A DNA stretch of 64,000 bases, taken from NCBI GenBank assembly GCA_964247055.1, contig OZ176057.1:1674001-1738000 (forward strand), in the 5' to 3' direction. Below, in pieces: positions 1 through 21,176 of the stretch. The stretch comes from Paragordius varius. Its lineage: Eukaryota; Animalia; Nematomorpha. Every line of letters begins with the position of its first letter. Positions within the stretch are counted from its first letter, which is position 1. The translations under genes were made by a program, and so were the position numbers. Below the pieces are notes generated by a model that did not search any database, was not told where the DNA came from, and worked only from the letters and a program-made list of their open reading frames with translations.

Positions 1-79
1 TAACTATCATTAGACGATGTCTCTTTGCTGAATAAGCTATTTAGCATTTTTTATAAACTTTCTATTCAATTATACTTAA

Positions 80-280
80 TCATACAGTAATTCACCCTAA
101 AATAAATTAGTGTTTTTTTAAGATTAAAAATTTTTTATAGTTTTAAAAATGTGACGAGTTATATTAGCCCGAAATCACATAATTTATTTTTAGAGTGAAT
201 TTGAATTGTTCGAATGTGATTTTGAATTGTTGAGGGTGAAATCGAAATGTTCAAGTGTGAATTACATAAATGGTATATAT
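80..280. repeat. Degenerate copy of the 21-bp-unit foldback family
   Basis: aattcaccctaaaataaatta at ~89 and inverted gtgaatttgaattgttcg... arm 175-275. Confidence 0.7.
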
Positions 281-1354
281 ATATATATATATATGTATTG
301 CCATATAGAATTTACAGTAAAAAGCTATTTTTCTTGCCTAAAAAGAAATACTTTTAGTAACGTTGTTATACAGTAAAAATGTAAATTATACAAACGTAAA
401 AATTATATGACAAATTTTTTTTCAAACCTGTTTGTAAACTTGATGTTTTTAGTATACAACAATATATTGGCTTCCGAAATAGTGATGATGTGAAACACTT
501 AATTTTATATTTTAATATAATTATAAATTTATAGAGGAATAATTAAAGTTTGAAAAAATGTGGTTGTCATTAATAATTTTTTATTTACGTTTTGTCTGTA
601 TGTTTTTTGTTTAAACTATAAACACGATAATATATTTTAAATTGTTTATAGTAACGACCGTTAAAGAAAATTTTTATATTGTAAATTCTCACTTATATTG
701 ACCACAATTCTACTGGAAATATCCGAAACCGTTTAAGTTTTGAGTTTATAATGAAAACAGTTCCGTATAAAACATTCTGCCCAAATTTTTTACCAAAAAA
801 TATTTCCCATACTAATAAAATTGTCCAACGTAATTTTGGCTATATTATTATAAGCCTTCAACCTTAAATTAGATTATGGTATATAACTTTGATACATGTT
901 AATTGACAACCTAAAAGTTAAATAATTAAAATAATTTTATGGAGCTGTTTGTTAGAAACGAGACTTACGATTAAAAAAACAATAGTTACGTCACAAAAAA
1001 AACGGTTAAGGTTCAAATATTTTTATAAATTTTAAAAACAACAATCTTCATATTTACCCCCATTATTAAATAGATGGCATATACAAATATATATCAACGT
1101 GCATTTATATCATTTTAATATTTGTGGGTTATTTTATCAAAATTTACGGGAAAGTTCGTTAGTATTTAAAATAATTGAATATGGCTATTAAAGGCTAAAA
1201 TTAACGGATTTTCATAAAAATATAATTTATAAAAGCTTCAAATTGAAACCGGTTCTGGTTCTTGAGATTAGGAACCTAAAATTTTTGAAAATCTTTTTTC
1301 TTACAAAATATTTAAATAAAATATTTTAATTAATAAGTATACTAATTTATATAT

Positions 1355-1615
1355 ATCATTTACAATTCATATTCACCCTTAAATAATTTAAAATTACCCT
1401 TGAACAATTAAAAATCACCCTCAAAGAAACTATATGTTTTTTAAGATTAAAAATTACCTATATTTTTTTAAAAAAAAATCCTAAATTAAAATAATGGTAA
1501 AAAATAATAAACTATGCCATAAAGATATAATCTTATTAATAATAATGAGTTATGTTAGTTAAATGCATAATATATTTGGGTGAAATTAATTTGGTCGAGG
1601 TTAAATTTGAACAAA
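1355..1615. repeat. Degenerate copy of the 21-bp-unit foldback family
   Basis: catttacaattcatattcacccttaaataatt...ttacccttgaacaatt left arm; gggtgaaatt...gaggttaaatttgaac right arm. Confidence 0.65.
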
Positions 1616-2670
1616 TTATATATAATATGCAATACATATATTATATATATATATTGTCAGATCAAAATACATAATAATTAATGATCAATATTAATAAAAA
1701 AATTGGCAGACGTATCAACTTTTGATTAATAACAAATAAGATGATCAAAATTTGATTTTTATAAATAAGTTTTATATAATAATTAAAAATTTAAACGTAT
1801 GCCAAAATTATTTTATTATTCTAAATCTGGAAGCACTAAATTTTAATGATTATTTATATATAATAATATGCAAATATAGTAAAATTAAAATTAGTTTTCT
1901 AAATTGTAAAATTAATTTGTGATTGATTTTTTGTAAATAAAAATCCTTTTATTGTATTTTTGATACAGACTATTCCTTAGCTTCCATGCAAATAATATCG
2001 AAATTAAAATATTTGGAATTTTATTTGACAACATAATTAATTTGTTTTTGCCGAATCAAAAACGTAATTTTTGGGGTTTCATTCGGCTAAATACTAATTT
2101 TACACAATATACGAATATTTATATATTTTAATTATTTAGATTAAAACCTTTTAAAGACAAAAACTAAGTCGATATAAATAATAATAGTGATATATTATTA
2201 TAATTAAAACTAAATTTCAAAAATAATAACAATTTAAAATGTTTGTCCATCCTTTGAAAAAGATACTCCCACCATTTATTGAAAACTTTGATTGAATACA
2301 TTTCACTTTTATATAAGATTTTAAAACAAAAACAAAGTATATGTTACAGTATGCACATATTTGCTGGAGTATTCACATTATTGTTTGATTGTCAACACAA
2401 TAGTGTATAGATAAAAACAACAAAATGTTCAAGTCAAACATTTTCCCTAACTTACAACATTAATTTGTTTATTTAATTATGGACAAAATTTATTTTATAG
2501 CACACGCTACTGTATTACCGATTGGCCAACAATAATGTGAATAGGTCAATTGCATACGGTATATAGGAATAAAAAAATGTTATTTCAATCAATCTCCAAT
2601 AAAACACTCCTAAGCAAAAAAAAAACAAAGCAAAGCCATGTCAAACATAAAACTTTTCATATCTACACGA

Positions 2671-3055
2671 TATATATACCATTTACAGTTCAAATTCACC
2701 CTTAAACAATTCAAATTCACCCTTGAACAATTCAAATTCACCCTTGAACAATTCAAATTCACCCTCGAACAATTCAAATTCACCCTAAAAATAAATTATG
2801 AAACTTCGGTCTAATATAACTCATAATTAAAATTAAATATATTTTTATGGCAAAGTTTATTATTTTTTCAGTATTATTTTGATTACATACAAAATTTCTT
2901 TTTTTATAAATATAAAAAATATAGCTAATATATAATCTTAAAAAACACATAATTTATTTTAGGGTGAATTTGAATTGTTCGAGGGTGAATTTGAATTGTT
3001 CAAGGGTGAATTTGAATTGTTTAAGGGTGAATTTGAACTGTAAATGGTATACATA
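2671..3055. mobile_element. Foldback MITE-like element with arms of 21-bp tandem repeats
   Basis: Left arm 2671-2800 (taccatttacagtt + 4x caaattcacccttgaacaatt-type units) is the near-perfect reverse complement of right arm ~2947-3055 (3 units); TA-rich termini. Confidence 0.85.
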
Positions 3056-3056
3056 C

Positions 3057-3318
3057 CTTTAAAGATGGTCGTAGCTCCAGGCCTACACAAATTTTCACCC
3101 CAATGCGTGTAAACCGTTCCACCAATATCTTCCAGGTCTGGGAGTTGGGGTGCAGGACACAGTCCACAGCTGGCATCCTCACCGGGCTGACCCTTAACCC
3201 CAACAGGTCCGGGCTTGCCTTGTGCCCCAATGGGACCGGGTTCACCCTGCGGACCGGATTCACCTTCTGGCCCTCGCTCGCCTTGAGGGCCCATGTTCCC
3301 GGGGAATCCTGGATCGCC
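3057..3318 (-). CDS. Collagen exon 14 (16 Gly-X-Y, CGLC, start of C-terminal domain)
   Basis: aaaaag|GGC...AAAG|gtatgt; phase 0/1; ends [22 protein letters not shown]. Confidence 0.9.
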
Positions 3319-6300
3319 CTTTTTATTTGTAATATTTATATATATATGTTATACGGTATAAAACGTGTCCGATCAACTTCATTTTACATACAAAAATTAA
3401 AAATTCAAATGGGGACCAGTAGTAAAAAATAGAGTCATGAGGAGAAACGTGTGAAAGATCATTTTTTTAATCTGAGTATATTATTGGTGAAATTTGAAAT
3501 ATTATATCATGAAATAAAATATGTTTTCAGGGATACCCGTTTTTGAATATATGAAAATTTACCCTTGAACACTTAAAATTCACCCCACGAACATATTCAT
3601 CAAACATTTCAAATCACCCTAAAAATGAATTATGTTTTTGCAAATCAAAATAAGTTTGATTTGTTTGATATTACATATGAGTTTTGTATTACCAATTTAT
3701 ATTCATATTTCTTATTTCGCCACCCAAAACGATAGTGTATACATGTTGATTAAAGTTTGTTACTGTATACATTGTTTGATATTCCTTAATTAATGCTAGC
3801 ATATAAATCAAAGGGCAATATTATTAACCTCTAGTTATTTTCGCTTTTTACTGCTATATTAACAAATAATAATGATAATAATGCTTGCTCTGTATGATAT
3901 CTGGAAATATTCAATAATATATATACTTATACTGTCAATAAAAGTTTTTTATATAGTCTTTTATGTGTTGTTTGCCTCTCCTCTAACATTTAATTTTTAC
4001 TGTACTAACTATGAAGAAAAAATTCAATATAAAATACAATTTACCGGAGCGCCACGAAGGCCACGTGGTCCAATCCCACCATTTTTGCCAGAACGTCCTC
4101 GCCGTCCAGGAAACCCTGGGATTCCGGGATCCCCTTTTTCCCCTTTGGGTCCTTGGGGCCCATCTTTTCCAGGGGCACCGGGGCGCCCTGGTCTGCCAGG
4201 AGGGCCTTTTTCACCTTGGGGACCCTAGAATTTATGTTTTTGATATAAAACTAAAACAGAGGACAAAACGTATAAACATCACGACAAATGTTTTTTTTTT
4301 CAAAAGACAATCCTCACGTGTTTTAAACCATATTTTTCCTAATTAAATTTAGCAATTACAATTGAAAAACACATAATAAAATGTGTTATCAATTAATAAC
4401 TTTATTTCATACATTGCAATTTATAACAATGTAGTTTTTAAAAAATAAGTTAAAAAAGTGTGCTTGTCTTAAAAAAATATTTATCTTTATATTTTGATGC
4501 TTTGTTCGTGCAATTACAATTTTTACTTTCCTTTTAAAAAATAGTATTAAGAATATCTGGTAAAAATTATAATTGTTCGTTATTATAATACAGTAGTGTG
4601 TGGCATAAAACAGTTTTTGTCCCTAAATCAAGAAGACACTGATGTTAATTACAGGGATTATTATTTTATTGCATTTATTTGTTCATTTTTTACAAACGCT
4701 ACTGTAAGATGCACATTAAATAATTTCCTAATTCTAAATTTTTCTAATCGATTAATTAATTATTTATATTGCTAATTTTATGATTCAATAAACCTTTTGT
4801 AAAATTATACCAAATGTTTGTATCAAATATATAGGCCTGATGAGATTCCAATATTGATAAAAAATTATTTAAAACTCTTCCAAAAAAAATATAAATATAT
4901 CATAAAAATAAGAATTTACAAGAGGTCCAGTGGGACCAGGGGCACCATCTTTACCAGGATTTCCATAATTTCCATCGGGCATATCTTTCCCAGGAATTCC
5001 TGGGCGTCCATCAATTCCATCTTGTCCAGAAGGGCCCGGGTCGCCCTAAAAAAGTTTTTTTGTCAACACATTTATTATGATAATTCATGTGAAGGGTAAA
5101 CGGATAACAATATGTGTAAATAAATTAGATTTCTAAAATCCTTTTCAGTATGCATATTAATTAGTCAAATCACAAGATTTTTGGTTAATTGGTACAGTAG
5201 CGTATGAAATTTAACAAGTTATCCATAATTAAATAAACAAATTTAATATTGTAAAATTGAAAAAAAAATGTTTAATTTTAACCATATGTTGTTCTTTACC
5301 CATATGCTACTTTATTGCCGATCGGGCAAAAATATAACTTACAGTAAACACAAAAAAAATTTTTCATTAATATTTAATTTACCATTATATTATTTGTTGC
5401 TAGAAATAGTGTCAGAAATATTCAATGAAAAAATAAAATTTAAAAGATATATGAATTTTTTTTACATTATACAGAATTATTTGACGTAATACTAATACAA
5501 TTCATATAGTAAATATTAATCTTTATGATTTTAACCTTGGCTCTAAAATGGTAAATAGAATTTTGAAAAATTAATATCAAACAATTAACTATATAATTTT
5601 TTATCAGAGTTTTTAGATTCAAAACCATGGTTCCAAAACACTATGATTTATTATTTATAAAAAATATTTAGTAACTTTCAATGTAACTATTTTACTGATA
5701 TTGATCATATTTCTGCGTTTTATCGGAACCTAAATCAACAATTCTAGTGATACAATTATAAAAGATTGATAATTATTGGCTCTCGCCTATTGGAAGCCAT
5801 ATAGCATATATATGTATGCATGTACGTAAAATTAAAAAACATTACTTGCTTTACATAAAAAAAAGTAGTACTTTAGCTCCTGGGGTGCCAGGAAGGCCAT
5901 CTTTACCAGGTGCACCGTCATCCCCATCCTTTCCTGGGGCCCCGTCCAGCCCATTTTCCCCGTCTAACCCATCTTTACCAGGGGCCCCGGTGGCACCCTA
6001 AAGAAAACCCAATATATTAATACAATAAAAAATGTAATTATACCTACATGGTGGACAAAACTACTGTTTGTAACTTTTATGTATTCCAATCCAATATAAT
6101 TTGTTAAATTGGAACATGTAAAAATATATAATTGATTGTGTTATTACTAAAAAATCTCTACTTTTGATACTCACAATAAGCGTGAGTTATGTTTTTTGAA
6201 AAAGTCAATTTTAAAATAGTACAGCAGTCTTATACAGAAAAACGATTTTACCTTATATTACAGTTTTGGCGTATAAAATTATAATTATCTATGTAGCATA

Positions 6301-9300
6301 TTTCGGGTTTTTGAATTAATTAAAATGGACATTAAAGCCGCCATGTAACTGATTTAATAAAGGTATAATCACCATTTTTAGCACAATTCTAATTAGTAGT
6401 CTTATTAAAGTCAAAACCACTGGAACAAATAATATATTAATAATTCTTGTAGAAATGTTATACAGGTGGATTAATTTTGTTTAACCCCGGAACGAAAAAC
6501 CAAATACAATATCTATAAAATATTTTTAAAAAGTCTAAAAATGTGAAATTTTCAAAACAATTAAAAAAATATTATAGAAAAAAAATGCAATTTCATGGGA
6601 AATATATAACTAATTTTATTAATTTTATTTGTGTTATTGTATTCGTAAACAGCGGTTAGACTGTGTTTCAATGTCCGATCAAATTCGGACCTAGGGTGTA
6701 AGTAATAGAGTTTAATAATCGAAAATTGATCCTTTTTAAACGAGTGTTATAGCTTTGATAGACCCTATATATATATATATATTTAATTAACAGAAAATAA
6801 TGGAGAATATAGGGTTGTGTTTTTTATGCCTTTGGGACAAAAATAATCGGTCTCACGGTTAACCATTTTTTAAGTTATCTAATCGGTGTTAATAGTGAAT
6901 AATTGCTACAAAACATTGTTAAAATGTGGATTTTTCACACATTTTTATCAAGTTTTTTCAAAAATGAAAATTAATATTTTTGGACTGCAATCAAAAAGTT
7001 AGTTTTGCAATATTTTTAAAAATTAAAATTTATTTATCAAATTATTTGTACGTATAAGAACCATACACTTAGCCTTTATAACTAAACTAGCGTGAGTCTC
7101 GTGCTGCTACGCAGCCCGAGGAAGTCCTTCGGACTTCTGGCGGGGGGGGGGGGGGGTTCGAAGTTTGGATTTGATTGGGTCTACTGGTTTTCCTGTACCA
7201 GATCACAAAGCCAGCATTTTCCATTTTTATAAATATATAGATTACCATAAATAATGTATTAATATCCATATATCTTTTAACATGCTATGCACATGATAGA
7301 TACTCCTTACTCAGCAGCTATCATCAAAGAAACGCTTGACTAAAATTTTTGCCTTTTAACAGGCAATACGAAAAATCTTTCTAGAATTTTTACAGTCTCA
7401 TATGGGCAAAAAAATACAATCAAAAAAATATTTTTGTGGACTTTGTTTTTTTTGATAAATTTTACGGGGGTAGCGGGTAAAAAGAGGGCCTAAATCAAAA
7501 AAGTGACTCGACTATGTTCAGCGCGATCAAAAATAAGTAAACAAAATTCATATTTGAAATTGAATGGTCCAACACGTTCTCCAAAAAATTGACTTATCCC
7601 ATTTTTCACACGGGGTGGGCCCGAACTGGGGACCTAATTCCAAAAAAGGGCGAAGCTATTGTCGGGGCATTCATTAATGATTATATTTTTTCGATATTTG
7701 GATTTGATTGGGTTCACCGGTTTTCCGGAAACAGATCACAAAGTTATATGAAAAATCAGTTTTTAGCGGGTAGCTCCTTACCCAGCAGCTATCATCAAAT
7801 AAACGGTGGACTAAAATTTTTGCCTTTTAACAGGGAATACGTGGAATCTTTATTGAATTTTTACGGTCTCATACCTAGGGCGAAAAATCGATTTAGAAAA
7901 TTATTTTTGTGGAAATGGCATTTTACGGGGAGAGCGGGTAAAAAGAGGGCCTAAATCAAAAAAGTGACTCGACTATGTTCGGCGCAATCGAAAATAAGTA
8001 AACAAAAATCATATTTGAAATTGAATGGTCCAACACATTCTCCGGAAAATTGTCTCAAAAACACGATTTTGTGGACTTCTGTTTTCAAAAAAAACCCGTT
8101 TTTCATACGGGGTGGGCCCGAACTGGGGGCCTATTTCAAAAAAAGGGCGAAGCTATTGTCGGGACATTTATTAATGATTATATTTTTTCGATATTTGGAT
8201 TTGATTGGGTCTACTGGTTTTCCTGTACCAGATCACAAAGCCAGCATTTTCCATTTTTATAAATATATAGATTATTCTTATTTATTTTTAAAGATAGGCT
8301 AAATTAATGATACTCACCCGTATCTATTAAATTTTTTTGTAAAATAAAGGTTCAAAAAATAAAAATAATGTTTTTGCATTAAAAATTATTGTTGATAATA
8401 CATCTTTCCATATATGTAATAATTCCACTAATATTTGAATTTCTCAAAAATTTAAGGGATTTGTCAAAATATTTTGCAAAAAAATTATAAAAAATTACAG
8501 GTAATCCATCTTGGCCAGGTAAACCGTCTTGACCGGGTTCGCCTGCCTCGCCATCCTTTCCAGGGTCTCCGGGCTGACCGTCAGAACCGCTATTTCCATC
8601 TTTTCCAGGTAGGCCGGGTAAACCCTAATAAACATTTATTTTGAAATAAATTTTGTGCTATAATTTGTCGGTGGGGAGCCTTTTAGGATTTTTGAATGAT
8701 AGTGTAGAAATTATCAGAGGTAATAAAAGGAGGTATTTTATTAATCAAATATTTTTTTAAAAAAATTTGTGGTTTTTCTTAGCAGTATTTATTGGAGGAT
8801 TTAAAGTTGATTCTTTTGCCTCGAAATGATATTGTCTTTTATAAAATTTTATTTAAACCTAAAAGAGCATTTATGATTTGCGGTTTAAGTAAAGTGTTAA
8901 AATTTTATGAAACGTTTACGTTTCCTGCTTCAAATCGTAAAGAAAGTAAAATTGCAATAAATATAAAACATTTTAAATCCTTCCAATTAAAATGTAATTT
9001 CTACTTCAATCCCAATGATATCGTTTAATAAACCTACTTTTAGGTTAAAAACGTTTTTTTTCTTTTGTGAAAAACATAAGCTAAGATTAAAAGTATAGGC
9101 CTTATGATATTGCAAAAAAGAAAAGAATTTCCAATTAGCCCGAGGTTTCCAACGTGCGGCCAGCGGGAGGCATGCGGTCCTCTACTTTTCGGCCCACGAA
9201 ATTTTTGAAAATTACGATAAGAAATTTCAAAATTTTAAAAAATTTGTATTAATTTATCCCTTTATATTTTATACCAACGAACTAAAAAATTGGTCAAAAA

Positions 9301-12300
9301 ATACAATTTATATTATCGGGGTAATATTTTTAATATCTAATAAACAATTTATTAATGCCTATATTTTTTTTCAGTGGGGCCGGCCGAGATTTTGAATCAA
9401 AAAATGCGCCCCGCGGAGCCATTAATATCGGGCACCCTCTGCTATTATCTAGCAATAAAATTTAATGAGAATTAAACGATGAATTATTTAATCAAACCGT
9501 ATAAAATTACAATAAATGTAAAAAAAATTTATTACAGGAGGTCCTGTGCGCCCTGGGGCACCGTCTCGTCCCGGTTGACCATCTCTCCCGGGTAAACCGT
9601 CTTTTCCAGCTGCACCTGGGAGTCCGTCTGATCCGTCAGGACCGGGGGCTCCTGTTGGTCCCTATTTTAAGTGTAGAAAATAAAATGTTTTAAAAAAAAT
9701 ACGAAAAAATATTTTTGTTTGTAATTCAAAAAAATGGATATTAGTATAAATGCGTTTAAAAAATAATTAAGTTTTATATAAACGAATCAATGAAAAAATT
9801 TTTTTTAAATTAAATTTCACTATAATTTTTTTATCTACTAAAAGTTGTATTGGTGGATGGAGAAATAATTTGGGCAATTATGAGAAGCCTATCCTAATGC
9901 AGATTCGGGGAAAAATTTTGCTACTTACTAATTTATTATGCAAACAACTCTTAAAGTATTTTATATAGAGAAATATTGAAAAATATTTTTTTATAAGACA
10001 ACCATACTTTTTAAACTTAATTATTACAATTTAACATTATATAATTCAATTGCAATCCCCGATTCGCAACCCAAAATGAGTTATATTTTACAAAATTAAA
10101 TAATTAATTTATCTCCATAAAAAACATTTGTTTTTGGTTATGCGTTTTGTCTGTAAATTTAACTTTTACTGTAAATATTACACCTGAACTTAACATGTTT
10201 CGGTTTTACTAAATTTATAAAATAACTGTAAGAATTATTTGATTTTAAAGCACTTTAATGGGTTATTTTGAATAATGAATCAAGTGATTGTATAATTATT
10301 TTGATATTGTACATATAGATTAAAGAATAAAAAATTCACATTATTAAATTTTATATCGAATAAATTAATATTTCTCCTAAATGAACCAAAGATATTAATT
10401 CTTTCTAAAATATAATTAAATATTGGATTGAGAATGATGAAAAATCTATTTAAAAGGAGAAACCTGTATTAAAGAATTATAAGCTGGCTGTGATTTCATA
10501 TTATTAATCAAAAAATTAAACAAAACGTTTTGAATTTCAAACATTAAGAAAACCAACCCGATAATACCGGGAATTATTTTAACGCTAAAGATATATATAT
10601 TTAACCAATTTTTAAATTATCATAAAAATTAACCAAACTTCATTTATTTCTTAAAAAAACCAAATATATACGAATCTAAGAAAAAAATTCAACCGGTGGT
10701 CCATCTAGCCCAGGGTTTCCGTCTTTTCCAGGAGGGCCTGGAGGCCCATCGCGACCGTCGTTGCCGGGACGACCAGGAGAACCAGGGTTGCCATCGCGAC
10801 CAGGGAATCCGGGATCGCCCTAAAAAAGGCATAAACCAATAAAACTAAATAATTTTATTTATGTGGTTTAGGGTGTCTTTTTTTTTCTTTTTTATTGAAG
10901 GGTAAAGACTAATTGGGTGAGAACTTGTGAAGGCTTTAACACTCGCTTGCCTGCCCAGGGCTAATTTTTTGGTAGAAAATGGCGCAGTTTTGGGGTTTGC
11001 TGACAGTGCAAGAGTTCGGCTCCCTGCCTATTATACCACCAAGTCTTCCTTATAAAAAATTATCTATTTGAAGGAAAATGATTTAAATAAAAAAATCTTA
11101 GCCATAAGCAAAGAGGCTAAAACTACCCATTTAGGAATCTTATGTTAACCAAAAATATAGTGGAATTGGTCCAGGTACAAAAAATGGATCTTAGAGGCAA
11201 AAAGCCTGATTGACAAATACAAGAATTAATAGCATTATGAAAGTTTTAATCTCTGAAATTAATTGCTATCGAAATATAAGAGTTTGGAAGCGAAACTGTT
11301 AGAGATTGCAAAACTCTAATCTATAAAAAAATTTCATAATTAAAATAACACAACCTTTATTAAATAATAGTTTTATATAAATTTCTGAATAATGCCAATG
11401 TATCCCGGTAATAAATAACAAAAGTTAATAAAAAAATTTTGATTAAAATGAAAAATTAAATATTTATACGGGTGGACCCTTGGGACCAGGTAGGCCATCT
11501 TTTCCTGGGGCACCATCTTGCCCATCTTTGCCTGGAAATCCGTCTTCTCCGGGTTCTCCATCTCGACCAGGGATGCCTGGTTTTCCAGGAGTTCCCTAAA
11601 AATCAAAATTATATTTAGAATAAAATTTAAATTTTAAATTAAAATTAAAATAAAAATCGTAAAATTTATATTGAATAAATAGCTTTGATCTCGATTTTGT
11701 ATAAATATTAGTCAAAAAAACCAAAGATTTATTAAACGTAGGCGGTTAAGATTTATGGGTCGTTTGTTAATTGGAAAATATTTAAATCTGTGAAAGGTAA
11801 AGATTTTTCGTTTTCCAGCTTAAATTTATCCAAAAGATTTTCAATTCAAACATATACTACTTGAACATATTCAATTCTTTCTTCAAAATACTCAATTTTC
11901 AAATGCGAAAAAATAAAAACTACACAAAGTCCACAAAAGAATCAATCTGATAAAATATATATATTTTGATAAGATTATGTATCAAAATTATCATGTGCTT
12001 TTGGTTTTGGCCCTTAAGAGTGATTTAAGGTTATTTTTATTTTTGTGGTAAATGCTTCACATCAGAAAATGGCAAAATTTCCGCAGAGGCTTTAGGCAAA
12101 AAATATATTAAAGAAAGGATAAAACAAAACGATATTGTCAAAAAATTTATAGGATGTGAGCTCCGAAAGTCCTAAATTTTTTTGCTCCTTATAGATTGGG
12201 TCTCTTAAAATAAAGGCAAAAATTCTGGGATTGCACGAATAAATTTTATATGCCAAATTATAATATCAACAAATATTTAAAAATACTTTTTTTAAAAAAC

Positions 12301-15300
12301 TTAATTTTACAATTTTGTTCAAGAGCGTATGTAAAACTTTTGCATGATGGAGACGGTATAAAAACGCTTTAAGACATTATAAAAAAAATTTCATATAATT
12401 CAATGGTGCTAAACATTCTTATCTCCCTAGACTTTAATTAAAATATCTGGTCTTCATATTTATGTTAAATAAAAATTATGTTTTGTTACAAAAATCCACT
12501 AAAATTTAGGCAAGCGAATTAAATTAAAATCTGAAGCGATAGAAATGTTCAGCATCTAATTTGAAAAATTATAACATCTTAAAGCATTCTTAAACCGTTT
12601 CCATCATGACTTATAATAGTATGAAATAAGATCTTTAAGAAAATTTTGCCAAATTTTTTTGAAAAAAGTAGGCATTTTTGTAAAAATATTTTAGTTGATA
12701 ATTTAGCATATAATAAAAAAAAATTTCCACAATACCGGAATTTTTGCGTTTATATTTAGATACCTAGCACATTATAGGAAAGCATAAAATCTTAGAACTT
12801 TCTGAGCCCACATCTAAAAATTAAAATTGAGGAAACATTGTTTTGTTTTTATATATATAGTTAAAGATATATTTTTTGGAATGGATTCTCTAGACCAAAA
12901 ATTTATTTAAAAAATGTGCGCATATTTCGCCATTTTCTGATATGGAGCACTTACCACAAAACTGTAAATATTTTTCTTACACTCGTAATAGCCAAAACCA
13001 AATGCACCATTATAATTTTAATACATTTCCTATCAGAATATATGTATTTTATCAGGTTATTTTGATGTATCCCTGATTGGATACAGTGTTAGATATAGCT
13101 TATCCAGTTATATAGAATTCAATTTTTCTATATAAATATAGAAAAAACATATAGATTTTAATATTGTCTGTGAATTAATTATTGTATGAAAATTTTATCC
13201 AAATAAAATAATTAACGAAAAGGGGTTTAAATAAGTTACCAAAGATGGTTGCGGTTATAACAACATTTATAAAATAAAATTAAATTTTAAGTTATGATGC
13301 TGACCTTAATAAGGCAATAAAATTTTTAAGTTATCAAACTTTTGCATAAAACCAGTTGTAATTTATACATTATTGAAACTATAATGAGAAAATTTGTTTA
13401 AATTGGTTGAAACCAACTTTTTGAAAAAGCTAGTATATTACAAAAAAATTGTTAAAAAACACAAATTCAAAAACTATATACCTTGTTACCAGGACGACCG
13501 GGTTGCCCATCGCGACCAGGGAAGCCATCTTTTCCTGGAGCGCCGGGTGGACCGTCTTTTCCAGGCGTTCCAGAGCCGAATCCTGGAGAGCCTGGGGCAC
13601 CTGGTGGACCCTATAACATACAAAATTATATTTTTCTTAACACTTCGATTCAAATTGGGTTATCAACCCCAGACTAAATTTAAGTTATAATTTTGTAAAA
13701 ACTATCGAAAGAAACGTTCCCAATTTAAATGCTTCTATCCTAATAAAAATTATATAAATATGCCAAAATATCTAAGTAAAATTTTGTTTAAAGAAGAGTT
13801 CTATGTCAAACTATTTCGAGGCCATTTTTATTTTAAATTTTTGCAAAATATCGTCTTCATTTTATTTAAGGGTAAAAAGCTAATTTTTTATCTAAATTAC
13901 ATCTAACATTGATAGAAAGAAAAAGCTGTTTATTTTGTATTATTTTTCAATTTTATCATTGAACACATGTCACGTGACCAAGTTTTACCTTTCGATTTTA
14001 GCTTAAATAAGTAATATCAAATGTTTTTGAATAATATTTTTATATATTTCGGTATATTAATGTTATATAAGTGCAAAATTTTGCCATGATTTCGATTACT
14101 TCCATATTATTTAAAATATTTTATTTTAAACAAGCCTGGGGTATTTAACTACCCCAATTCGAAACGAAGGACTAAAATGAATGTGTTGTATCCGAGTGTA
14201 TATATATTTGATAAAAAATAATTTTGTGGACCCTAAACATATGTTTATAGGGAAAAAAATTTTAAAAAATTTTCGACATAAAATTTATAATTTTATGTAC
14301 AACTCCTATATAAATTTAAGCTTTTTATAGACAAATTGATACACTTAAGAATTAAATTTGTCTTAACATTTGTACATATATTGATGGGGAAATAAATAGT
14401 TTTTTTCTGTTAATATTTTGATAAATGTTATTTTATGGACCCTAAACACATACATTTATGGAGAAAAGTTTAATTATATATATCCGGATTTTTTTGACAA
14501 TATCATAGTATAATCAATCGTGTATAGAGAACCAAATTTTTTTAAAGAGTAATTAATACACTTATTGCCTCCAAAACTCTGTGGACTTAAAACATGGGGA
14601 ATATTTTTTTAGGTTAAAATTTATTTTGGACATAAAATTTACCATTGTATCAATAATTGATATTTTAATTAAATTTATTTTGTTGTAAATTATTTTAAAG
14701 TTAATTTTAAACAACTCCTGCCAATGCCTTTGTATAAGAATGATTTTAATATATTTCCTTGTTGACGATGATGCGGCGAACCTTACAAAAAATTTCTTAT
14801 TCTCCTATATAAGATGATACACTTTATATAAAATAACTGATCACCGAAACTATAGTTTATTCTATTTAATACAATCAGTTATTTAACAATAAATCGATAA
14901 ATTTCCTTCCCCTGCGAATAAATTTTAATCATATAAAATTTTCTAAAAATGATTTGTTATCTAATATGGTTAGAATGAGCAATGATTATTTAAAGGGGAT
15001 TAAACGGGAAAGCCAAAAATATAAATAAACCGTATTCCTTTGTCCCAGTCTAAAAGCGATTTAATATTTAAACATAACGTTACCTAAAACATACCCAGTT
15101 AATAAAATTCCCAGTTAATCGAAATGTAACATCCAGTCATTGGAAATGCAAAATTAGATAGTGAATTGGTTTATAATTAATCAAATAATTTTTAATTAAC
15201 CGAAAAATCTGCAATTTATTAGTAACCTTATTTATTAACACATGACTATTAATATAGATTGCGTAAAATAAATAAAAAACTACTCTAGGTCCGGGTTTAC

Positions 15301-18300
15301 CCGGGCTGCCATCTAGACCGGGTGTCCCGGGTTCTCCAGGGTTTCCAGGAGCTCCTCGCTCACCTGGCGTTCCTTGAGGTCCATCGTTTCCAGGATCACC
15401 TGGTTCACCAGCTGAGGCTGGTCGACACGGGCAAACATCTGTTTTAATTGTGAAATTTTATTATTTTACGTAATAGTAATTAATTTTATTGCCTGCGATG
15501 AAAAATTTTTGTTTTTAACCAAATATTAACTAATGCACATAATTATATAATTTATATTTATATCGTTAAAAATTTATTTTTCATGACAAAGTATAGTTTA
15601 AAATATTTTAAATTACTATAACAGCTTATATCTGGTCTCTTAAATTAGCATATTAATATAATCATTTCATATTAAACTGTAAAAGGCAAGAAAACTTAGA
15701 ACATGTCATTAAGTATTTTAAAGCGCGCAGAAAAGTTTTCAAAACTTTAAATCTATATAAACTTGGAAACTCGATATATCGCAAATTGATTTATTTAAAT
15801 ATAAAAGATATCCAATTTTAAACTACAAATCTTTATATTTTACATGAATTTTTAGATCTAGGTTTTGGTCCTATGAGTTTTATAAGAATGTTATTTAAAC
15901 TTTTATGGTTATCATTAAACGCTTTCGATAAAGAAATGTGCATGCTTAAAAGGACAAATCATTTGTATAGAAAGACTGAACAGTGGCTGGATTTTACGTA
16001 TAGTTAAATGCCATTATTTTGACTATCGTTTGGAAAACCAAAAAAAATTACATAATATTCGAGTTTTCTTCATATACCAATAATATCAAAATGAAAAGGG
16101 CTTTGTTATTAAAAATAATCTTTTTAATAAATTTATTTATAAAAAAAATCATACTATCGGCCTCGCTCCCTATGAATTGTTCATTTGAAGCGCCTCCATT
16201 AAATCCGCCATTTCCATTTCCTACGGCACGGCCATTCGAGATTCCAAAGCCTAAATTTTTATTAAATTAAAATTATATCGGGACAAAACGTAAAAATATA
16301 GAGACAAAGGATTTTAGTAAAGGTCGCTATACTTTTTTAAACTTATTATTTCCTAATCTAAATTATTTTACAATTGTATAATATATAATTTGTGTTACCA
16401 ATTATATCTTTATATCATACTTTGCACTTTAGTTTAGAAAAATACAGCAGTATTTTAAAAATTTGTCTTTACGTTTTATTTTGTCTGTATAATTTAAGTT
16501 TTACTGTATATATGAAAGAAATTTGGATAAGATTACCAAAATTATTAAGATTTATTTGCACTAAAATATCAAATATAAAGTAATCTAGGGCTTAGTGAAT
16601 AAGACAGTTTTTATACACTCAGTAAAATGCATGTTTTTTATCTATATTATAAGATAGTCCTGAATGTTTAAGAAAAAGAGGTAGCTGAAAAATTGGTCAT
16701 TTATAGTATATAAGGAAATGTGTTACAGAATTATATTTTTTACTAAACTTAACATAATTAAAATTAATATTATTGGAGTGTTAATCATATTCAAATATAC
16801 CCAAATAAAAATAAAACCAGTCTTAACTATATTTTTTGGCCTCTCCATAAAAACTTGCTCTGTGTATTTTATGCCTTATTATGCGCGCGTCCCCTGAATT
16901 GTAAAATTGTTATGTATGTATTAAAAAAAATTACTATATTACATCACATCCTTAGACTCACAAATTTTGAACCACATGCTTTATGATTAATATAATACTA
17001 GATCAAAGCCTCATAAATTAATTGTTTAAAAAGCACGAAACATTGGATTCAAATACTTTAGCTTATTTTTTTTATTTTTAAAGACACAGATACTTACTAG
17101 TTAGCAATCAAATATTCATGCATATTTTAAATATATTTAATGATTGCTATATTTAATTGAATTCCAATTAAAATAATGCTCTGTATACCTCCATATTGAG
17201 CGAAGGCTGCTTGGTTTGCACCTCTACGCCCGCTTGAAGAGCTGACCCTCCGTGCTACTTGGTTATCATGTAGAATGGCATCCCGATCACTCCCAAAATC
17301 ATTGTACGTTTGTTGTCGTTTTTGACGCCGCGATTTGGACGAAGTGCGTTTTTTACTTTTGCTTTTGTCCTTTTTATCTTTTTCTCCTTTGTGTTCAGCA
17401 TCAACACTTTTTCTGATGCGTTTTATTCTGCGTTCGTGAGTAAATGCTTGTGACAAATCTGTATTATCGAGTTTGGTGAAATCATTCGAATCAGAAGAAT
17501 CGAGAACACCATGTGTCGGTAACAAAAATGTGGCTTGTTGTCCAGTACCACCCAACTGTTCTTGACCTGCATCTTGCGGATTTATAAGTTCTGACGTATC
17601 CCACATATCAGCGGTGACTATTGGTATATTTAACATTGCTTCTCCGCCCTGATGCGGTGATTGTACATACTGTACTACATGGTCATAGGGTTGTTGAAAC
17701 GGTTCTCTAACCCGATGTTTATGATGTACTTCAACGACTTCTTGACTTACCACATAATCCGTTGGGGCTTGATTGAGGTTATTAGAATCGCCCAAAACTA
17801 AGTTAGGATCAATAATCATGGGGAAAATGGTACCTTCTTCTGCTGGAACCGAAATAAATTGATCCGCTAACGTATTTTCTTCATTTGTCACGGGTGTTAA
17901 GGTATCAACATGACTCTAAAATTGAAATGATACATATGTCATATTGAAATAATTAAATTTGGGAAATAAGTTGTTATATTGATGAAAAAGGTGTTATACG
18001 ATTTGACAGATATCCGCAAAATAACTAAAAAATAATATTTTGTCCGAATTTTTACCAAAACTTAGATAAAAAAAGTATATGATACTAAATTAATAAATTT
18101 CTTATGATATATTAATGAAAAAATATTTAAATTTTTGGTCACTCATTTGTCTTTACACCTTAATTTTATTGGAGTCTATACTGAATTATTAACTAGTAGA
18201 TTTAAATACCCTTATAAGGGAGATGTTATAAATTTTTTAAAATTCAATCGGATGGAGTATATTTTAATTCAAAAATATACATTATTAAGAATAAGTTATA

Positions 18301-21176
18301 TTTTATATTTATCCCTATATACATTCTATATTTTCAATATTTCATCATTATGTATATGTTAATTAATCATAGAAAACGCATATAAATATATCTAATTTAT
18401 CAAATAATCAACCACAAATAGCTATTAAAATGATGAGCTTAAAAAAAAATATTTAAGTGGGGCACATAATGGGTGGAGTGGAATCCATAAGAAAAAATTA
18501 AACAGTAAAAAACCTTTAAAAGTTGTTAACGCCAATTTAATTGATAATTGACACAAATGGAGAAAATATTTAAAACATGTCGTAAAGTTAAATAAATTAT
18601 TTTCACATTTTCTTGCTAAGCAGAAACAAAGAATATTTTTTAAATTAATATATTAACAAGCTGGTAGAGTCAATCTTATGGTTCTGCCTGTGTTCTCATT
18701 TAAGCATATTTTTATGACCTATTATTATGCTTAATTGATATTTTATATTTCCCTGCTGATAAATAATTAATTTTGGAAAAATGTAAATAATCACATCTTA
18801 TGCTGTAAAAACATGGTGCCATATTAGATGACATTTTGAAAAGTAAAACAATGAACTTTGGTAAGTACCATTTATGTGTTATGACCTCAAACTAGAGGAC
18901 AAAAAGATATATTTATATGTACTAAAATTATAATTGGTCCTCAAAAAGCGAAATATAATTTATATTGTGCATGCAAATAAATGAATGAAAAAAAACTTGT
19001 AATGAATTTAGCAGAGCAAACATTCCGTTTAATTCTTCTTCTTTAAGGAGAAGCTTTTTAAGGGCTGTAGAGCTTTGAGCATTGAGCAAATTAGGGTTTG
19101 TTAGAGCAGGTTTGATAAAATGATCGCTAGGTATATCTGCTGTCCGATTCATTTTCTATTATATTAAATTAAGAATTATTGAATCTTTTCTAAAATACGA
19201 ATAATCTAACAACCTTTTACACGGTTAAATATTTAAATGTTAATTATTAAGGATACTTTAATTTAAATATAAAAGTAACATTTTTATTTATGTCTGTATG
19301 TTTGGCTTATATAGAGAGCAGACGAAAAATTATATTTAATTCACATGGACGTATAATTAGTTGTGGAAAATGCCTCTAGACTGCTATTTATTTTTATAAT
19401 CATTTTTAATATAATTTTCAGATTTAGTTAAATTTTTTACTGGTAAAACCTGTAACCATGTCTACTCAACATCATTTAACAGTCTAAACTAGTGAAAAAA
19501 ATGCATGACAATTAAAATATGAAATTTTTAAACAACCAAAGACATTAATGTTTATTATCAATAAAATTTCATGGCTATACTTCTATTAAAGCAATCAGGC
19601 CAAGTTCCATGATACGAGACGCATCTAAGATATTTCTCTTTTATATGTGATAAAATTTATATTTTCCTACTTTCAAACCACCAATAAAGGCCCAAAATGA
19701 TTGCATAATAATAGAAATTTGTGTAAACGACTAAAAAATATTTAAAAAAGGCGGACATATAAAAATTCTAAACGTATTAAATTAAACATTGTTCACAATT
19801 AAAAATGACTATGAGTTTAGGATGAGATAAAAACCTTTTTTTCTAAACAGATAAGCTAAATAATGGTATATTAGAATATGTCCATTTTTAGGGAAGATTG
19901 TGGATTAATAATAATTATCATCAATATTGTATTTTTATTTATAAATCATATATTTTGATTTAATTTATATATATAAAAATCAAATTATCCTAAAATTACA
20001 TATCATTACACCTAATTGATTGTTGAATCGGTATATGGATTTTTTTGATAATGTAAAAATTGAAGATGTGTTAATGACTGCTTTGTAAATAAGTTCTAAC
20101 AAATACATTTCATGAAATTCAAATCTTTCAAAAAATTTTCTAATTACTTTAAAATATTTTTTATTTAATGATTATAAGGATAAGCACAAAAATATTAGGT
20201 CAAAATTAACATATCTGCCAACACTAAAGAGTCAAAAATTTAACACGACTTCAAAATATAACTGTATATCACAAGAAGATTGATTACAATCATTTTTATC
20301 GTATATTTTTGATAATAAATTAGAAAAAGAAACCTGAAGTTTATCATTATTAACATGATTCGATGATAAAGGTGTAATCACATAAGCATTTTTGGGTGAA
20401 AAATTTGTTTGAGAGTCTGTATCAGGTGCCAAAGGCCCATTTATTCGCCAGTCGAAAAAGGGTGCCGAGTTTGACATATTTTGGCTATTATTTTGGTGTA
20501 GCTGCTGTTGTTGTTGTTTTTGCATGAGATAAACTGCTTGTTTTAACATTTCAACATTATTCAATTCATGGTTCTTGCTATTTGAGGGTGGCGGGTAAAA
20601 TTTACCAGTTAGCTTATTGAGACGCACAAAAATCATTGAGGCCGTGACAAGAGCCAGTGATAGTGTCGCTATTATGACTATGCATTTTAACAAGGTGTGT
20701 AGGATGGTTTTCGTATTCGTCGTTTTTGAATCATTAATAGGATGTTTATGATGTTGGTAATAATAGGATGAAGAACCAATCGAGGAGCTATCATCCTTTG
20801 TTCCTCCATTAAGTTTGGTCGTAAATGAACAGGACAAAATATTTGAGGATGGAGCGTGGGTTGAACCAATGTAATGATTAAAGAAATTCCGATAACTACC
20901 CTTAGTCGAATTGGGTAGGGGTAGATGTTTTTGTAATTTTGGCACTACTGGCCCATTTGTAGCGTTAGATTTATTTTCGGCACAACTTTGCTGGGTAGTA
21001 TTTTGTCTGCCATTTGTAGCGTTAGATTTATTTTCGACACAACTTTGCTGGGTAGTATTTTGTCTGTCAGACCTTGAGTTTCCGTTTAAATTGTCTTGGG
21101 GAGTTTCAGAATAATTTTGGGGCATTGTTTGAGGATTCAATTTGTCGACTGAATCTAATGAATTGGTCCCCATCAT
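3057..21176 (-). CDS. Multi-exon type II transmembrane collagen, at least 1102 aa, 3' end incomplete
   Basis: 14 exons join in frame with GT-AG: 21176-20334, 19155-18997, 17915-17189, 16250-16155, 15438-15284, 13610-13482, 11595-11470, 10819-10694, 9661-9536, 8624-8499, 5997-5872, 5045-4920, 4224-4045, 3318-3057 (3307 nt). Phase-1 junctions match (G|GC, A|AT). TM segment [24 protein letters not shown] and RQKR, CPC, ~147 Gly-X-Y triplets, [20 protein letters not shown]. Confidence 0.88.
3480..3635. repeat. Fragments of the 21-bp-unit foldback family (intron 13)
   Basis: ggtgaaatttgaa; tttacccttgaacacttaaaattcacccc; tcaccctaaaaatgaattatg. Confidence 0.55.
4045..4224 (-). CDS. Collagen exon 13 (180 nt, 20 Gly-X-Y)
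   Basis: ttctag|GGT...CCG|gtaaat. Confidence 0.93.
4920..5045 (-). CDS. Collagen exon 12 (126 nt, one Gly replaced by Met)
   Basis: ttttag|GGC...CTT|gtaaat; GKD-MPD-GNY. Confidence 0.92.
5872..5997 (-). CDS. Collagen exon 11 (126 nt)
   Basis: ctttag|GGT...AAA|gtacta; 14 Gly-X-Y. Confidence 0.93.
7087..7241 (-). mobile_element. Minimal 155-bp non-autonomous Helitron
   Basis: Minus strand: A|TCTATATATTTATAAAAATGG ... hairpin CTCGGGCTGC-GTA-GCAGCACGAG ... CTAG|T; A/T target with no TSD. Confidence 0.85.
7290..8271 (-). mobile_element. 3'-truncated Helitron of the same family with ~2 internal ~465-475-bp repeats
   Basis: Same A|TCTATATATTTATAAAAATGG 5' end at 8271; repeat units match 28343-30509. 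Confidence 0.8.
8499..8624 (-). CDS. Collagen exon 10 (126 nt)
   Basis: tattag|GGT...CCT|gtaatt; 14 Gly-X-Y. Confidence 0.93.
9140..9440. mobile_element. hAT-type MITE (Buster/Charlie-like), ~300 bp
   Basis: 5' ccgaggtttccaacgtgcggcc, 3' atcgggcaccctctg, subterminal gcggcc motifs, degenerate 8-bp TSD caattagc/ctattatc. Confidence 0.65.
9536..9661 (-). CDS. Collagen exon 9 (126 nt)
   Basis: aaatag|GGA...CCT|gtaata; 14 Gly-X-Y. Confidence 0.93.
10694..10819 (-). CDS. Collagen exon 8 (126 nt)
   Basis: ttttag|GGC...CCG|gttgaa; 14 Gly-X-Y. Confidence 0.93.
10940..11330 (+). pseudogene. Possible highly decayed non-LTR RT fragment (intron 7)
   Basis: GC-richer island with frameshifted PAQG, VLGFADS and THLGIL..PKI.W motifs in RT order; weak. 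Confidence 0.3.
11470..11595 (-). CDS. Collagen exon 7 (126 nt)
   Basis: ttttag|GGA...CCC|gtataa; 14 Gly-X-Y. Confidence 0.93.
11921..13088. mobile_element. Long-TIR foldback element, ~1.15 kb (intron 6)
   Basis: 11925-12300 is an inverted, diverged copy of ~12700-13088 (e.g. ggttttggccc / gccaaaacc, catcagaaaatggcaaa / ttcgccattttctgat); ends resemble tacactgtgtcca. Confidence 0.75.
13482..13610 (-). CDS. Collagen exon 6 (129 nt, GFGS interruption)
   Basis: ttatag|GGT...AAG|gtatat. Confidence 0.93.
15284..15438 (-). CDS. Collagen exon 5 (VCPC + 14 Gly-X-Y)
   Basis: aaacag|ATGTT...AGA|gtagtt; 155 nt. Confidence 0.92.
16155..16250 (-). CDS. Collagen exon 4 (Gly/Asn-rich linker)
   Basis: atttag|GCTTT...GATA|gtatga; 96 nt, phase 1/1; [20 protein letters not shown]. 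Confidence 0.8.
17189..17915 (-). CDS. Collagen exon 3 (stalk, furin-type sites)
   Basis: ttttag|AGTCAT...GGAG|gtatac; 727 nt, phase 0/1; RIKR and RQKR. Confidence 0.8.
18997..19155 (-). CDS. Collagen exon 2 (53 codons)
   Basis: taatag|AAAATGAAT...TTACAA|gttttt; phase 0/0, fits between exons 1 and 3. Confidence 0.65.
20334..21176 (-). CDS. Collagen exon 1 (N-terminal tail + TM helix, 281 codons)
   Basis: ATG at 21176, open frame, hydrophobic stretch ~20625-20684, donor CAG|gtttct phase 0. Linkage to the collagen exons is inferred from phase continuity. Confidence 0.75.

What the first reader, a model, noticed from the sequence alone, without database searches (positions are those of the whole stretch)
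3057..21176. Hybrid collagen: type II membrane anchor + furin stalk + Cys-flanked long helix + spongin-type C-terminal domain
Seen: ~160-aa N-terminal tail, one TM helix (aa ~165-184), ~430-aa low-complexity stalk, two RxKR sites, CPC, 445-aa triple helix, [16 protein letters not shown]. Known: TM + furin site + Cys-flanked Gly-X-Y is the nematode cuticle collagen plan (with shorter helices) and, loosely, the MACIT (collagen XIII/XXIII/XXV) plan; neither carries a spongin short-chain-type C-terminal domain, which I know mainly from secreted proteins. Inference: a possibly undescribed class of membrane-tethered, sheddable network collagen for cuticle or matrix assembly.
Basis: partly seen in the sequence, partly recalled or inferred. 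Interest (0 to 1): 0.75.

Follow-up and report, generated by a model that had tools for sequence, protein, structure and literature searches.

The report
Membrane-anchored collagen gene, end missing
This is a real, many-exon collagen gene that probably starts with a membrane anchor and protease release sites and begins a "spongin"-type end domain, but its last part lies outside the window, no RNA confirms the joined exons, and this scan has already noted the same design at least eight times in this genome.

Summary
On the minus strand, ten phase-0 GT..AG exons (15438 to 3057) encode a 445-residue Gly-X-Y helix with two small breaks. Upstream on the same strand are two long ORFs far beyond chance. 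One has a single strong hydrophobic helix at aa 166-184. The other has RIKR and RQKR, the latter 42 residues before the CPC exon.

Three limits apply:
- **C-terminal domain.** Only its first ~22 residues are in the window. The exon ends at a donor at 3057, nothing coding lies in 1-3056, and the gene runs off the window. Pfam, PDB and a word search cannot classify the stub. Only a language-model look-up points to C4/NC1 and "short-chain collagen C4-like" clusters.
- **Exon joining.** The anchor exons are joined to the collagen exons without RNA support, and hundreds of in-frame splice chains exist.
- **Novelty.** It is not a one-off. This scan noted the same layout at least eight times on other DNA of this genome, one copy about 33-47 kb away. 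Earlier follow-ups call it an old design; I did not test that.

Verdict: another member of that family, with an unusually long tail and stalk. A foldback repeat sits on the last donor.

The parts
20288..21176 (-). Putative exon 1: start codon, ~165-aa hydrophilic N-terminal tail, signal-anchor helix, start of the stalk. Donor GATT|gtaatc, phase 1.
   Evidence: 314-codon ORF, far beyond chance. The donor is the only GTA donor near the ORF end. No Pfam family and no relatives of 173-550 aa.
20625..20681 (-). Predicted transmembrane / signal-anchor helix (aa 166-184 of the exon-1 ORF).
   Evidence: Kyte-Doolittle 19-residue mean of 2.58, the top value of the ORF. AlphaFold2 helix 152-190 with pLDDT 84-94.
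20484..20573 (-). Predicted juxtamembrane helix (aa 202-231, Gln-rich), a possible short coiled coil.
   Evidence: AlphaFold2 single-sequence helix 202-231, pLDDT up to 86. The coiled-coil reading is inference.
20953..21066 (-). 57-bp x 2 in-frame tandem duplication, giving a 19-aa repeat in the N-terminal tail.
   Evidence: Tandem Repeats Finder: period 57, 2.0 copies, 98% matches.
18997..19139 (-). Optional extra exon, present only in the 4-exon N-terminal model. It then joins acceptor 17915 instead of 17842.
   Evidence: In-frame chain 20288 | 19139-18997 | 17915. Local GC is 0.38. There is no independent support.
17189..17842 (-). Stalk exon with two furin-type sites. Acceptor ttccag|CA, donor GGAG|gtatac, both phase 1.
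   Evidence: 254-codon ORF. It is in frame with exon 1 and with the CPC exon. AlphaFold2 is mostly below pLDDT 50. No relatives of 140-445 aa.
17418..17429 (-). RIKR, dibasic proprotein-convertase consensus site 1.
17316..17327 (-). RQKR, dibasic proprotein-convertase consensus site 2, 42 residues before the end of this exon.
15284..15438 (-). Exon with CPC (15425-15433) and the first 42 helix residues. Its acceptor aaaacag|AT is weak and phase 1.
   Evidence: Two alternative acceptors further downstream would drop the CPC (read from the sequence shown).
13482..13610 (-). Helix exon of 129 bp, containing the one-residue break GFG-S-GTP.
11470..11595 (-). Helix exon, 126 bp (14 triplets).
10694..10819 (-). 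Helix exon, 126 bp.
9536..9661 (-). Helix exon, 126 bp.
8499..8624 (-). Helix exon, 126 bp.
5872..5997 (-). Helix exon, 126 bp.
4920..5045 (-). Helix exon, 126 bp, with the break GKD-MPD-GNY.
4045..4224 (-). Helix exon, 180 bp.
3057..3318 (-). Last exon in the window: 48 helix residues, CGLC (3157-3168) and the first ~22 residues of the C4/NC1-like end domain (3058-3123). It ends at donor AAG|GTATGT, phase 1.
   Evidence: Atlas feature look-ups point to C4/NC1 clusters. Pfam and PDB give nothing for the stub.
1..3056 (-). First 3056 bases of the last intron seen. It holds no exon, so the rest of the gene lies before the window's start.
   Evidence: Three-frame reading. No 90-nt window reaches GC 0.33 before base 3001.
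2671..3055 (.). Foldback element made of two inverted arrays of a 21-bp unit. It starts at intron base +2 and so encloses the donor site.
   Evidence: Arms of 102 nt, 95% complementary. RNA fold -189 kcal/mol, z -23. The unit occurs only in 1-3055 of the window.

Best explanation
The window holds most of one gene on the minus strand, from 21176 down to 3057, and the gene continues past the window's start. It encodes a type II membrane-anchored, protease-releasable collagen of the spongin (collagen-IV-related short-chain) kind. It is one more member of a multigene family in this AT-rich genome, which earlier notes take for a horsehair worm.

Proposed working:
1. The protein has no cleavable signal peptide. 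The single hydrophobic helix after a ~165-residue tail acts as a signal anchor and puts the collagen part in the ER lumen. This step is inferred.
2. Three chains associate. Nucleation is by the C-terminal NC1-like domain, as in collagen IV and spongins, and/or by the short juxtamembrane helix, as in collagens XIII/XXIII/XXV. This step is inferred.
3. The CPC and CGLC pairs at the two ends of the 445-residue helix lock the trimer by disulfides. This step is inferred.
4. A furin-type convertase cuts at RIKR and/or RQKR. That releases a short N-peptide, the helix and the end domain into the matrix or cuticle. The tail, the anchor and most of the disordered stalk stay on the cell. This step is inferred.

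Shown here: the exons, their phases, the helix, the cysteines, the dibasic sites and the hydrophobic helix.
Not shown here: the splicing of the 5' exons, the rest of the end domain, expression, cleavage and location.
For: - Ten Gly-first, phase-0, AG/GT-flanked exons give an unbroken 445-residue helix.
- The two upstream ORFs lie on the same strand and are far longer than chance allows: 336 and 262 open codons, against at most 139 in shuffles.
- Simple GT/AG sites join them in frame to the CPC exon, and all three junctions are phase 1.
- The exon-1 ORF holds the only strong hydrophobic helix.
- No ATG plus signal-peptide exon with a phase-1 donor lies between 20232 and 15445. A collagen needs an ER-targeting signal.
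- RQKR sits 42 residues before the end of its exon, which joins the CPC exon.
- The last exon, and its 39 non-collagen residues taken alone, fall nearest to C4/NC1 and 'short-chain collagen C4-like' clusters. Scores are 0.94-0.97 and 0.85-0.89.
- Differences to a near-identical DNA run within exon 2 are few: three third-position silent changes, one replacement and one 3-nt insertion.
- Unchecked AI leads: eight or more notes describe the same layout in this genome, and one gene lies about 33-47 kb away.
Against: - There is no transcript evidence at all.
- 4760 in-frame splice chains exist between exon 1 and the CPC exon, and the CPC exon's acceptor is weak.
- The N-terminal exons have no Pfam family and no relatives in the length range that could be searched. 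Nothing outside this locus ties them to a collagen.
- The end domain is represented by ~22 residues only. Pfam, PDB and a word search give nothing for it.
- The Atlas scores for the stub alone are below the 0.9 that the tool calls more than a lead.
- A strong foldback encloses the last donor and could impair splicing.
Confidence: 0.6

Rival explanations
1. There are two genes. The ORFs at 21176-20232 and 17891-17127 belong to a separate, lineage-specific single-pass membrane protein. The collagen gene has its own first exon, not recognised here.
For: There is no RNA support for the junctions. Many alternative chains exist. The CPC exon's acceptor is poor. The N-terminal ORFs have no collagen-related or any other relatives. 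A 160-aa tail plus a stalk of more than 300 aa is unusual for a collagen.
Against: No credible ATG plus signal-peptide exon lies between 20232 and 15445. The exon-2 donor and the CPC-exon acceptor share phase 1 and read through without a stop. Dibasic sites just before a Cys-bracketed helix are what a releasable collagen needs. Notes on paralogs describe an anchor plus a cutting site ahead of the helix (unchecked).
Confidence: 0.2
2. It is a crippled or decaying copy. The foldback insertion at the last donor blocks splicing, or the downstream exon is lost. The product then ends by read-through at the stop at 2959, without a full end domain.
For: The foldback element starts at intron base +2 and pairs the donor into a stem of about 115 bp, with an RNA fold of -189 kcal/mol. 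No further exon is found in 3 kb. Other introns of the gene are 650-2501 nt. No RNA evidence of expression exists.
Against: All thirteen or so exons seen are open and the Gly-X-Y register is intact. The donor AAG|GTATGT is a good consensus. A neighbouring paralog is noted to have its last exon behind a long intron with similar arrays (unchecked). This suggests the structure is tolerated.
Confidence: 0.1
3. The C-terminal stretch is not a spongin/C4-type domain. It is a short cysteine-containing tail, as in nematode cuticle collagens, and the resemblance of ~22 residues is chance.
For: Pfam C4 and PDB collagen IV NC1 chains are not hit even at E = 10. No word-sharing relatives were found. Atlas scores for the stub alone are 0.85-0.89, which the tool rates as a lead only.
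Against: Nine of the ten best family-bearing Atlas hits to the stub share the C4 family or clan. The whole exon scores 0.94-0.97 to C4/NC1 clusters. Published work says spongin end domains escape both PF01410 and PF01413 (PMC12749355), so the Pfam blank means little. The exon ends at a good donor in mid-domain. Paralogs are noted with full spongin-type domains (unchecked).
Confidence: 0.1

Closest known systems
Spongin short-chain collagens (collagen IV-related; Aouacheria et al. 2006, as cited in PMC5395295 and PMC3308698)
   Same: A single collagenous domain of comparable size: 148 triplets here against about 120 repeats in PMC3308698. It is followed directly by a stretch that feature look-ups place next to C4/NC1 and 'short-chain collagen C4-like' clusters. 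There is no HSQ motif in the stub, as reported for spongins (PMC5395295).
   Different: The papers I read do not mention a membrane anchor or convertase sites in spongins. They say ecdysozoans lack the family. If the genome is a horsehair worm, as earlier notes say, that statement needs revising. Only the first ~22 residues of the domain are visible here.
Membrane-anchored spongin-type collagen genes noted by this scan in the same genome (s1-257474, s1-261325, s1-257547, s1-257501, s1-373740 and others)
   Same: The described layout is the same: anchor, protease site, Cys-flanked helix, spongin-type end. One copy lies about 33-47 kb away, apparently in tandem. Its last exon is also said to sit behind an intron with repeated acceptor-like arrays.
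   Different: I could not read those loci, so sequence kinship is untested. This gene appears to have a much longer N-terminal tail (~165 aa) and stalk (~330-400 aa) than 'starts with a membrane anchor' suggests. Its end domain is cut off by the window.
Nematode cuticle collagens
   Same: An N-terminal hydrophobic anchor, a dibasic convertase site before the helix, cysteine pairs at both helix ends, and many G-x-D / G-K-D triplets.
   Different: There is no match to the nematode cuticle collagen N-terminal family in Pfam. The helix is about three times longer and nearly uninterrupted. The C-terminus starts a C4-like domain instead of a short tail.
MACITs (collagens XIII/XXIII/XXV, C. elegans COL-99; PMC4678570) and collagen XVII
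   Same: Type II orientation, an ectodomain that is mostly collagen, convertase shedding sites near the membrane, and a possible juxtamembrane helix for trimer nucleation. A long cytoplasmic part is known from collagen XVII (my own knowledge).
   Different: There is one long helix with two tiny breaks, not several COL domains. Cysteine knots sit at both ends. A C4-like end domain is present. No sequence similarity was detected.

Membership tests
Spongin short-chain collagens | One collagenous domain of the order of 120 Gly-X-Y repeats | tested here: met
   147 full triplets in 445 residues, with two small breaks. The yardstick comes from PMC3308698.
Spongin short-chain collagens | C-terminal NC1 domain homologous to collagen IV NC1, with seven shared and three spongin-specific cysteines (PMC5395295) | tested here: inconclusive
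   Only ~22 residues with one cysteine are in the window. Pfam, PDB and the word search give nothing. Atlas features point to C4/NC1 clusters at 0.85-0.97.
Spongin short-chain collagens | No HSQ motif in the NC1 domain (PMC5395295) | tested here: inconclusive
   The visible stub has no HSQ. Most of the domain is not visible.
Nematode cuticle collagens | Nematode cuticle collagen N-terminal domain (Pfam) | tested here: not met
   The N-terminal ORFs hit no collagen family at E up to 1; the only hits for the second ORF are two weak sub-threshold unrelated ones.
Nematode cuticle collagens | Short helix of about 50 repeats in blocks (PMC3308698) | tested here: not met
   445-residue helix.
Nematode cuticle collagens | Dibasic convertase site between the anchor and the first cysteine cluster | tested here: met
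   RIKR and RQKR lie upstream of CPC. Cleavage itself was not tested.
MACIT (collagens XIII/XXIII/XXV) | Type II single-pass anchor near the N-terminus | tested here: met
   Hydrophobic helix at aa 166-184, with no signal peptide ahead of it. Orientation is inferred. The link of this exon to the collagen exons is unproven.
MACIT (collagens XIII/XXIII/XXV) | Several collagenous domains separated by non-collagenous linkers | tested here: not met
   One helix with breaks of one and three residues.
Membrane-anchored spongin-type collagens of this genome (scan notes) | Sequence kinship with the other noted genes | not testable with these tools
The look-up by sequence was blank.

The most novel reading that the evidence does not exclude
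This copy could be a distinct subclass of the family: a two-part precursor in a moulting animal. Convertase cutting would release a spongin-type collagen into the cuticle or matrix. A large stub (~165-aa cytoplasmic tail, anchor and a disordered stalk of roughly 300 aa) would stay on the cell with a role of its own. The family as a whole would then be the missing link between spongins and the anchor-plus-furin cuticle collagens of nematodes.
Probability: 0.15. Interest if true: 0.65.

Novelty: new member of a known kind. Interest (0 to 1): 0.35.

Why it matters
The family would be of real interest to matrix evolution if two things hold. The genome would have to be a horsehair worm, and the end domain would have to be spongin-type. 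Reviews state that ecdysozoans lost spongins (PMC5395295, PMC3308698). The layout of anchor, furin site and Cys knots is what nematode cuticle collagens use.

That point was already made by this scan on better, complete copies. This locus adds three things:
- A further, probably tandem, member of the family.
- A member with an unusually long tail and stalk.
- A curious foldback of acceptor-like repeats sitting on the last donor site.

It cannot carry the main claim, because its end domain is cut off by the window and its 5' exons are unverified.

Tried and rejected
1. **Exhaustive HMMER search** with the last exon (87 aa). It gave 9336 hits, and the 150 shown are long generic, mostly bacterial or phage, collagen-like proteins. 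None has the Y..WG...C motif or a matching end. A query without Gly-X-Y would have been too short to score.
2. **Word searches.** Exon-1 ORF, exon-2 ORF and the stub region all gave nothing. The length limit excludes full-length proteins, so these blanks say little.
3. **Pfam and PDB on the stub** gave nothing.
4. **RNA evidence.** No RNA run holds the locus. The three 'RNA?' runs laid nothing. The DNA run of 'organism B' is near-identical and too patchy to compare exons with introns.
5. **Splice-site matrix** trained on the ten collagen exons. It is biased by the Gly-Pro codons at exon edges and was not used to choose models.
6. **Exhaustive chain enumeration**. Too many legal chains exist for it to decide.
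7. **MITE inside the exon.** I checked whether the foldback had split a coding exon, with coding sequence resuming below 2671. It does not.
8. **Exon duplication.** The 126-bp exons are 46-60% identical at the DNA level, about what Gly-X-Y composition gives. This is no evidence of recent duplication.
9. **Literature search** for membrane-anchored spongins. I found no description. Aouacheria et al. 2006 is not held.
Full report
**What is in the sequence**

The window is AT-rich (GC 0.21-0.37). All collagen coding lies on the minus strand between 15438 and 3057. Ten exons carry it. Each starts with a Gly codon right after an AG and ends before a GT, and all are phase 0. Seven contain a 126-bp (14-triplet) unit. 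Introns measure 650-2501 nt. Joined in a script only, they read as follows:
- CPC, then a helix of exactly 445 residues, then CGLC.
- The helix has a one-residue break (GFG-S-GTP) and one Gly-less triplet (GKD-MPD-GNY).
- After CGLC comes the stretch [22 protein letters not shown].
- The Y position is Pro in 71 and Asp in 37 of 147 triplets. Lys is the second commonest X residue (18 of 147).

**The 3' end**

The last exon ends at 3057 at a good donor (AAG|GTATGT), in phase 1 and in the middle of the presumed domain.
- Below it, none of the three frames reads like coding sequence.
- No 90-nt window in 1-3000 reaches GC 0.33, whereas the exons have GC 0.36-0.64.

The gene therefore runs off the low end of the window.

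The stub alone gets nothing from Pfam or from PDB sequences even at E = 10. It has no word-sharing relatives. The Pfam blank means little. A sponge genome paper reports that spongin end domains match neither PF01410 nor PF01413 (PMC12749355).

The only positive sign is the ESM Atlas feature look-up.
- The whole exon scores 0.94-0.97 to C4/NC1 clusters.
- The 39 non-collagen residues alone score 0.85-0.89 to C4 clusters and to a cnidarian 'short-chain collagen C4-like' cluster.

The tool itself rates these as leads.

**The 5' end**

Two ORFs upstream on the same strand are 314 and 254 codons from their start codons (336 and 262 stop to stop). Open stretches in the window average 13.7 codons, and shuffles of this region never exceed 139.

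The first ORF has a hydrophilic tail of about 165 residues with an in-frame 57-bp duplication. It has one strong hydrophobic helix at aa 166-184. AlphaFold2 without an alignment gives only that helix (152-190, pLDDT 84-94) and a Gln-rich helix at 202-231. Everything else is below 50.

The second ORF is predicted mostly disordered. It holds RIKR and RQKR, the latter 42 residues before the end of its exon.

The simplest splice model joins all three parts in frame with phase-1 junctions: 21176-20288 | 17842-17189 | 15438-.... The pre-helix part is then about 524 or about 596 residues.

Arguments for the link:
- A collagen must enter the ER.
- No ATG plus signal-peptide exon with a compatible donor lies between the first ORF and the CPC exon.
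- The donor of the RxKR exon and the only acceptor that keeps CPC are both phase 1.

Arguments against:
- There is no RNA. No RNA run holds the locus.
- 4760 legal chains exist.
- The CPC acceptor is weak.
- The N-terminal exons have no Pfam family and no relatives in the length ranges I could search.

Differences to a near-identical DNA run lean towards coding constraint but are too few to count. Within exon 2 there are three silent third-position changes, one replacement and one 3-nt insertion, and exon 1 adds one further replacement.

I put the link at about 0.7.

**Context from this scan (AI notes, not evidence)**

The notes list at least eight other genes in this genome with the layout anchor, furin site, collagen, spongin-type end. 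One lies 47171 to about 33285 letters before this window's start. Another note describes 'decoy 3' splice sites in front of the collagen's last exon' 56 kb before the start.

Three follow-up agents took the genome for a horsehair worm. They reported the same layout in cnidarians, an annelid and amphioxus, and called it an old design. I could verify neither the organism nor the cross-phylum claim. My one exhaustive search was swamped by generic collagens, and the word searches are limited by length.

What I can say is that this gene fits the description and is probably a tandem neighbour of another member.

**Literature**
- Spongins are described as short-chain collagens of about 120 repeats with a collagen-IV-related end domain.
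- They are reported from sponges to basal chordates, but 'not in ecdysozoa or vertebrates' (PMC3308698; PMC5395295).
- None of the papers I read mentions a membrane anchor on spongins.

The helix here (148 triplets) is therefore spongin-sized, not 'long', except by comparison with nematode cuticle collagens.

**How it most likely works**

Steps 2-5 below are inferred, not shown.
1. The exons, phases, motifs and hydrophobic helix are shown.
2. The helix at aa 166-184 acts as a signal anchor, with the N-terminus in the cytoplasm.
3. The chains trimerise through the end domain and/or the juxtamembrane helix.
4. The CPC and CGLC pairs form disulfide knots.
5. A convertase cuts at RIKR/RQKR. This frees the helix plus end domain for assembly in the cuticle or matrix and leaves a large stub on the cell.

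**A side observation**

The last visible intron opens with a foldback element (2671-3055).
- It is built of two inverted arrays of a 21-bp unit, with arms of 102 nt that are 95% complementary.
- It starts at intron base +2, so the donor lies inside a stem. The RNA fold is -189 kcal/mol with z -23.
- All 11 copies of the unit in the 64-kb window lie in this intron.
- On the transcript strand, one orientation reads like the gene's own acceptors (..UUGUUCAAG|GGU..).

Whether this regulates or harms splicing is open.

**Verdict**

This is a real collagen gene. The gene is best filed as a further member of the membrane-anchored spongin-type collagen family already found by this scan, so interest is modest.

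Noticed in passing
window 2671-3055: Foldback element made of two inverted arrays of a 21-bp unit. It starts at base +2 of the intron after the exon ending at 3057, so the 5' splice site is paired in a stem of about 115 bp (RNA fold -189 kcal/mol, z -23).
   Followed up: partly
window 89-263, 1348-1472, 2671-2790, 2954-3055: All 11 copies of the 21-bp unit (CAATTCAAATTCACCCTTGAA) in the 64-kb window lie in this one intron (0.01 expected by chance). On the transcript strand, one orientation mimics the gene's acceptors (UUCAAG|GGU). This recalls note s1-373572 on the neighbouring collagen gene.
   Followed up: partly
window 20953-21066: A 57-bp unit is repeated twice at 98% identity, in frame, giving a 19-residue repeat in the putative cytoplasmic tail.
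   Followed up: no
window 16255-16453: Very high contig depth (about 919, against 1-30 elsewhere) in the DNA run of the related organism. A high-copy repeat sits in the intron upstream of the CPC exon, next to a GC-rich island at 16160-16280.
   Followed up: no
window 7157-8295: The longest intron (8498-5998) holds repeats of about 100-146 nt at 89-93% identity, spaced 461-497 nt (one pair 1030 nt).
   Followed up: no
window 44304-45329 and 61054-62082: Two near-identical intronless ORFs (341 and 342 aa) for a hydrophobic protein, about 16.7 kb apart on the plus strand. The first copy was already noted as s1-253094.
   Followed up: no
window 32267-34925(-), 52824-55524(+), 37197-38519(-): Two copies of what reads like a non-LTR retrotransposon with endonuclease- and reverse-transcriptase-like ORFs, and what look like integrase-type ORFs of an LTR element. 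The names are my reading of the translations; no family scan was run. They fill much of the window's GC-richer parts.
   Followed up: no
window 3175-15409 (helix exons): Asp occupies the Y position in 37 of 147 triplets, and Lys is the second commonest X residue (18 of 147). This is a strongly zwitterionic helix surface.
   Followed up: no
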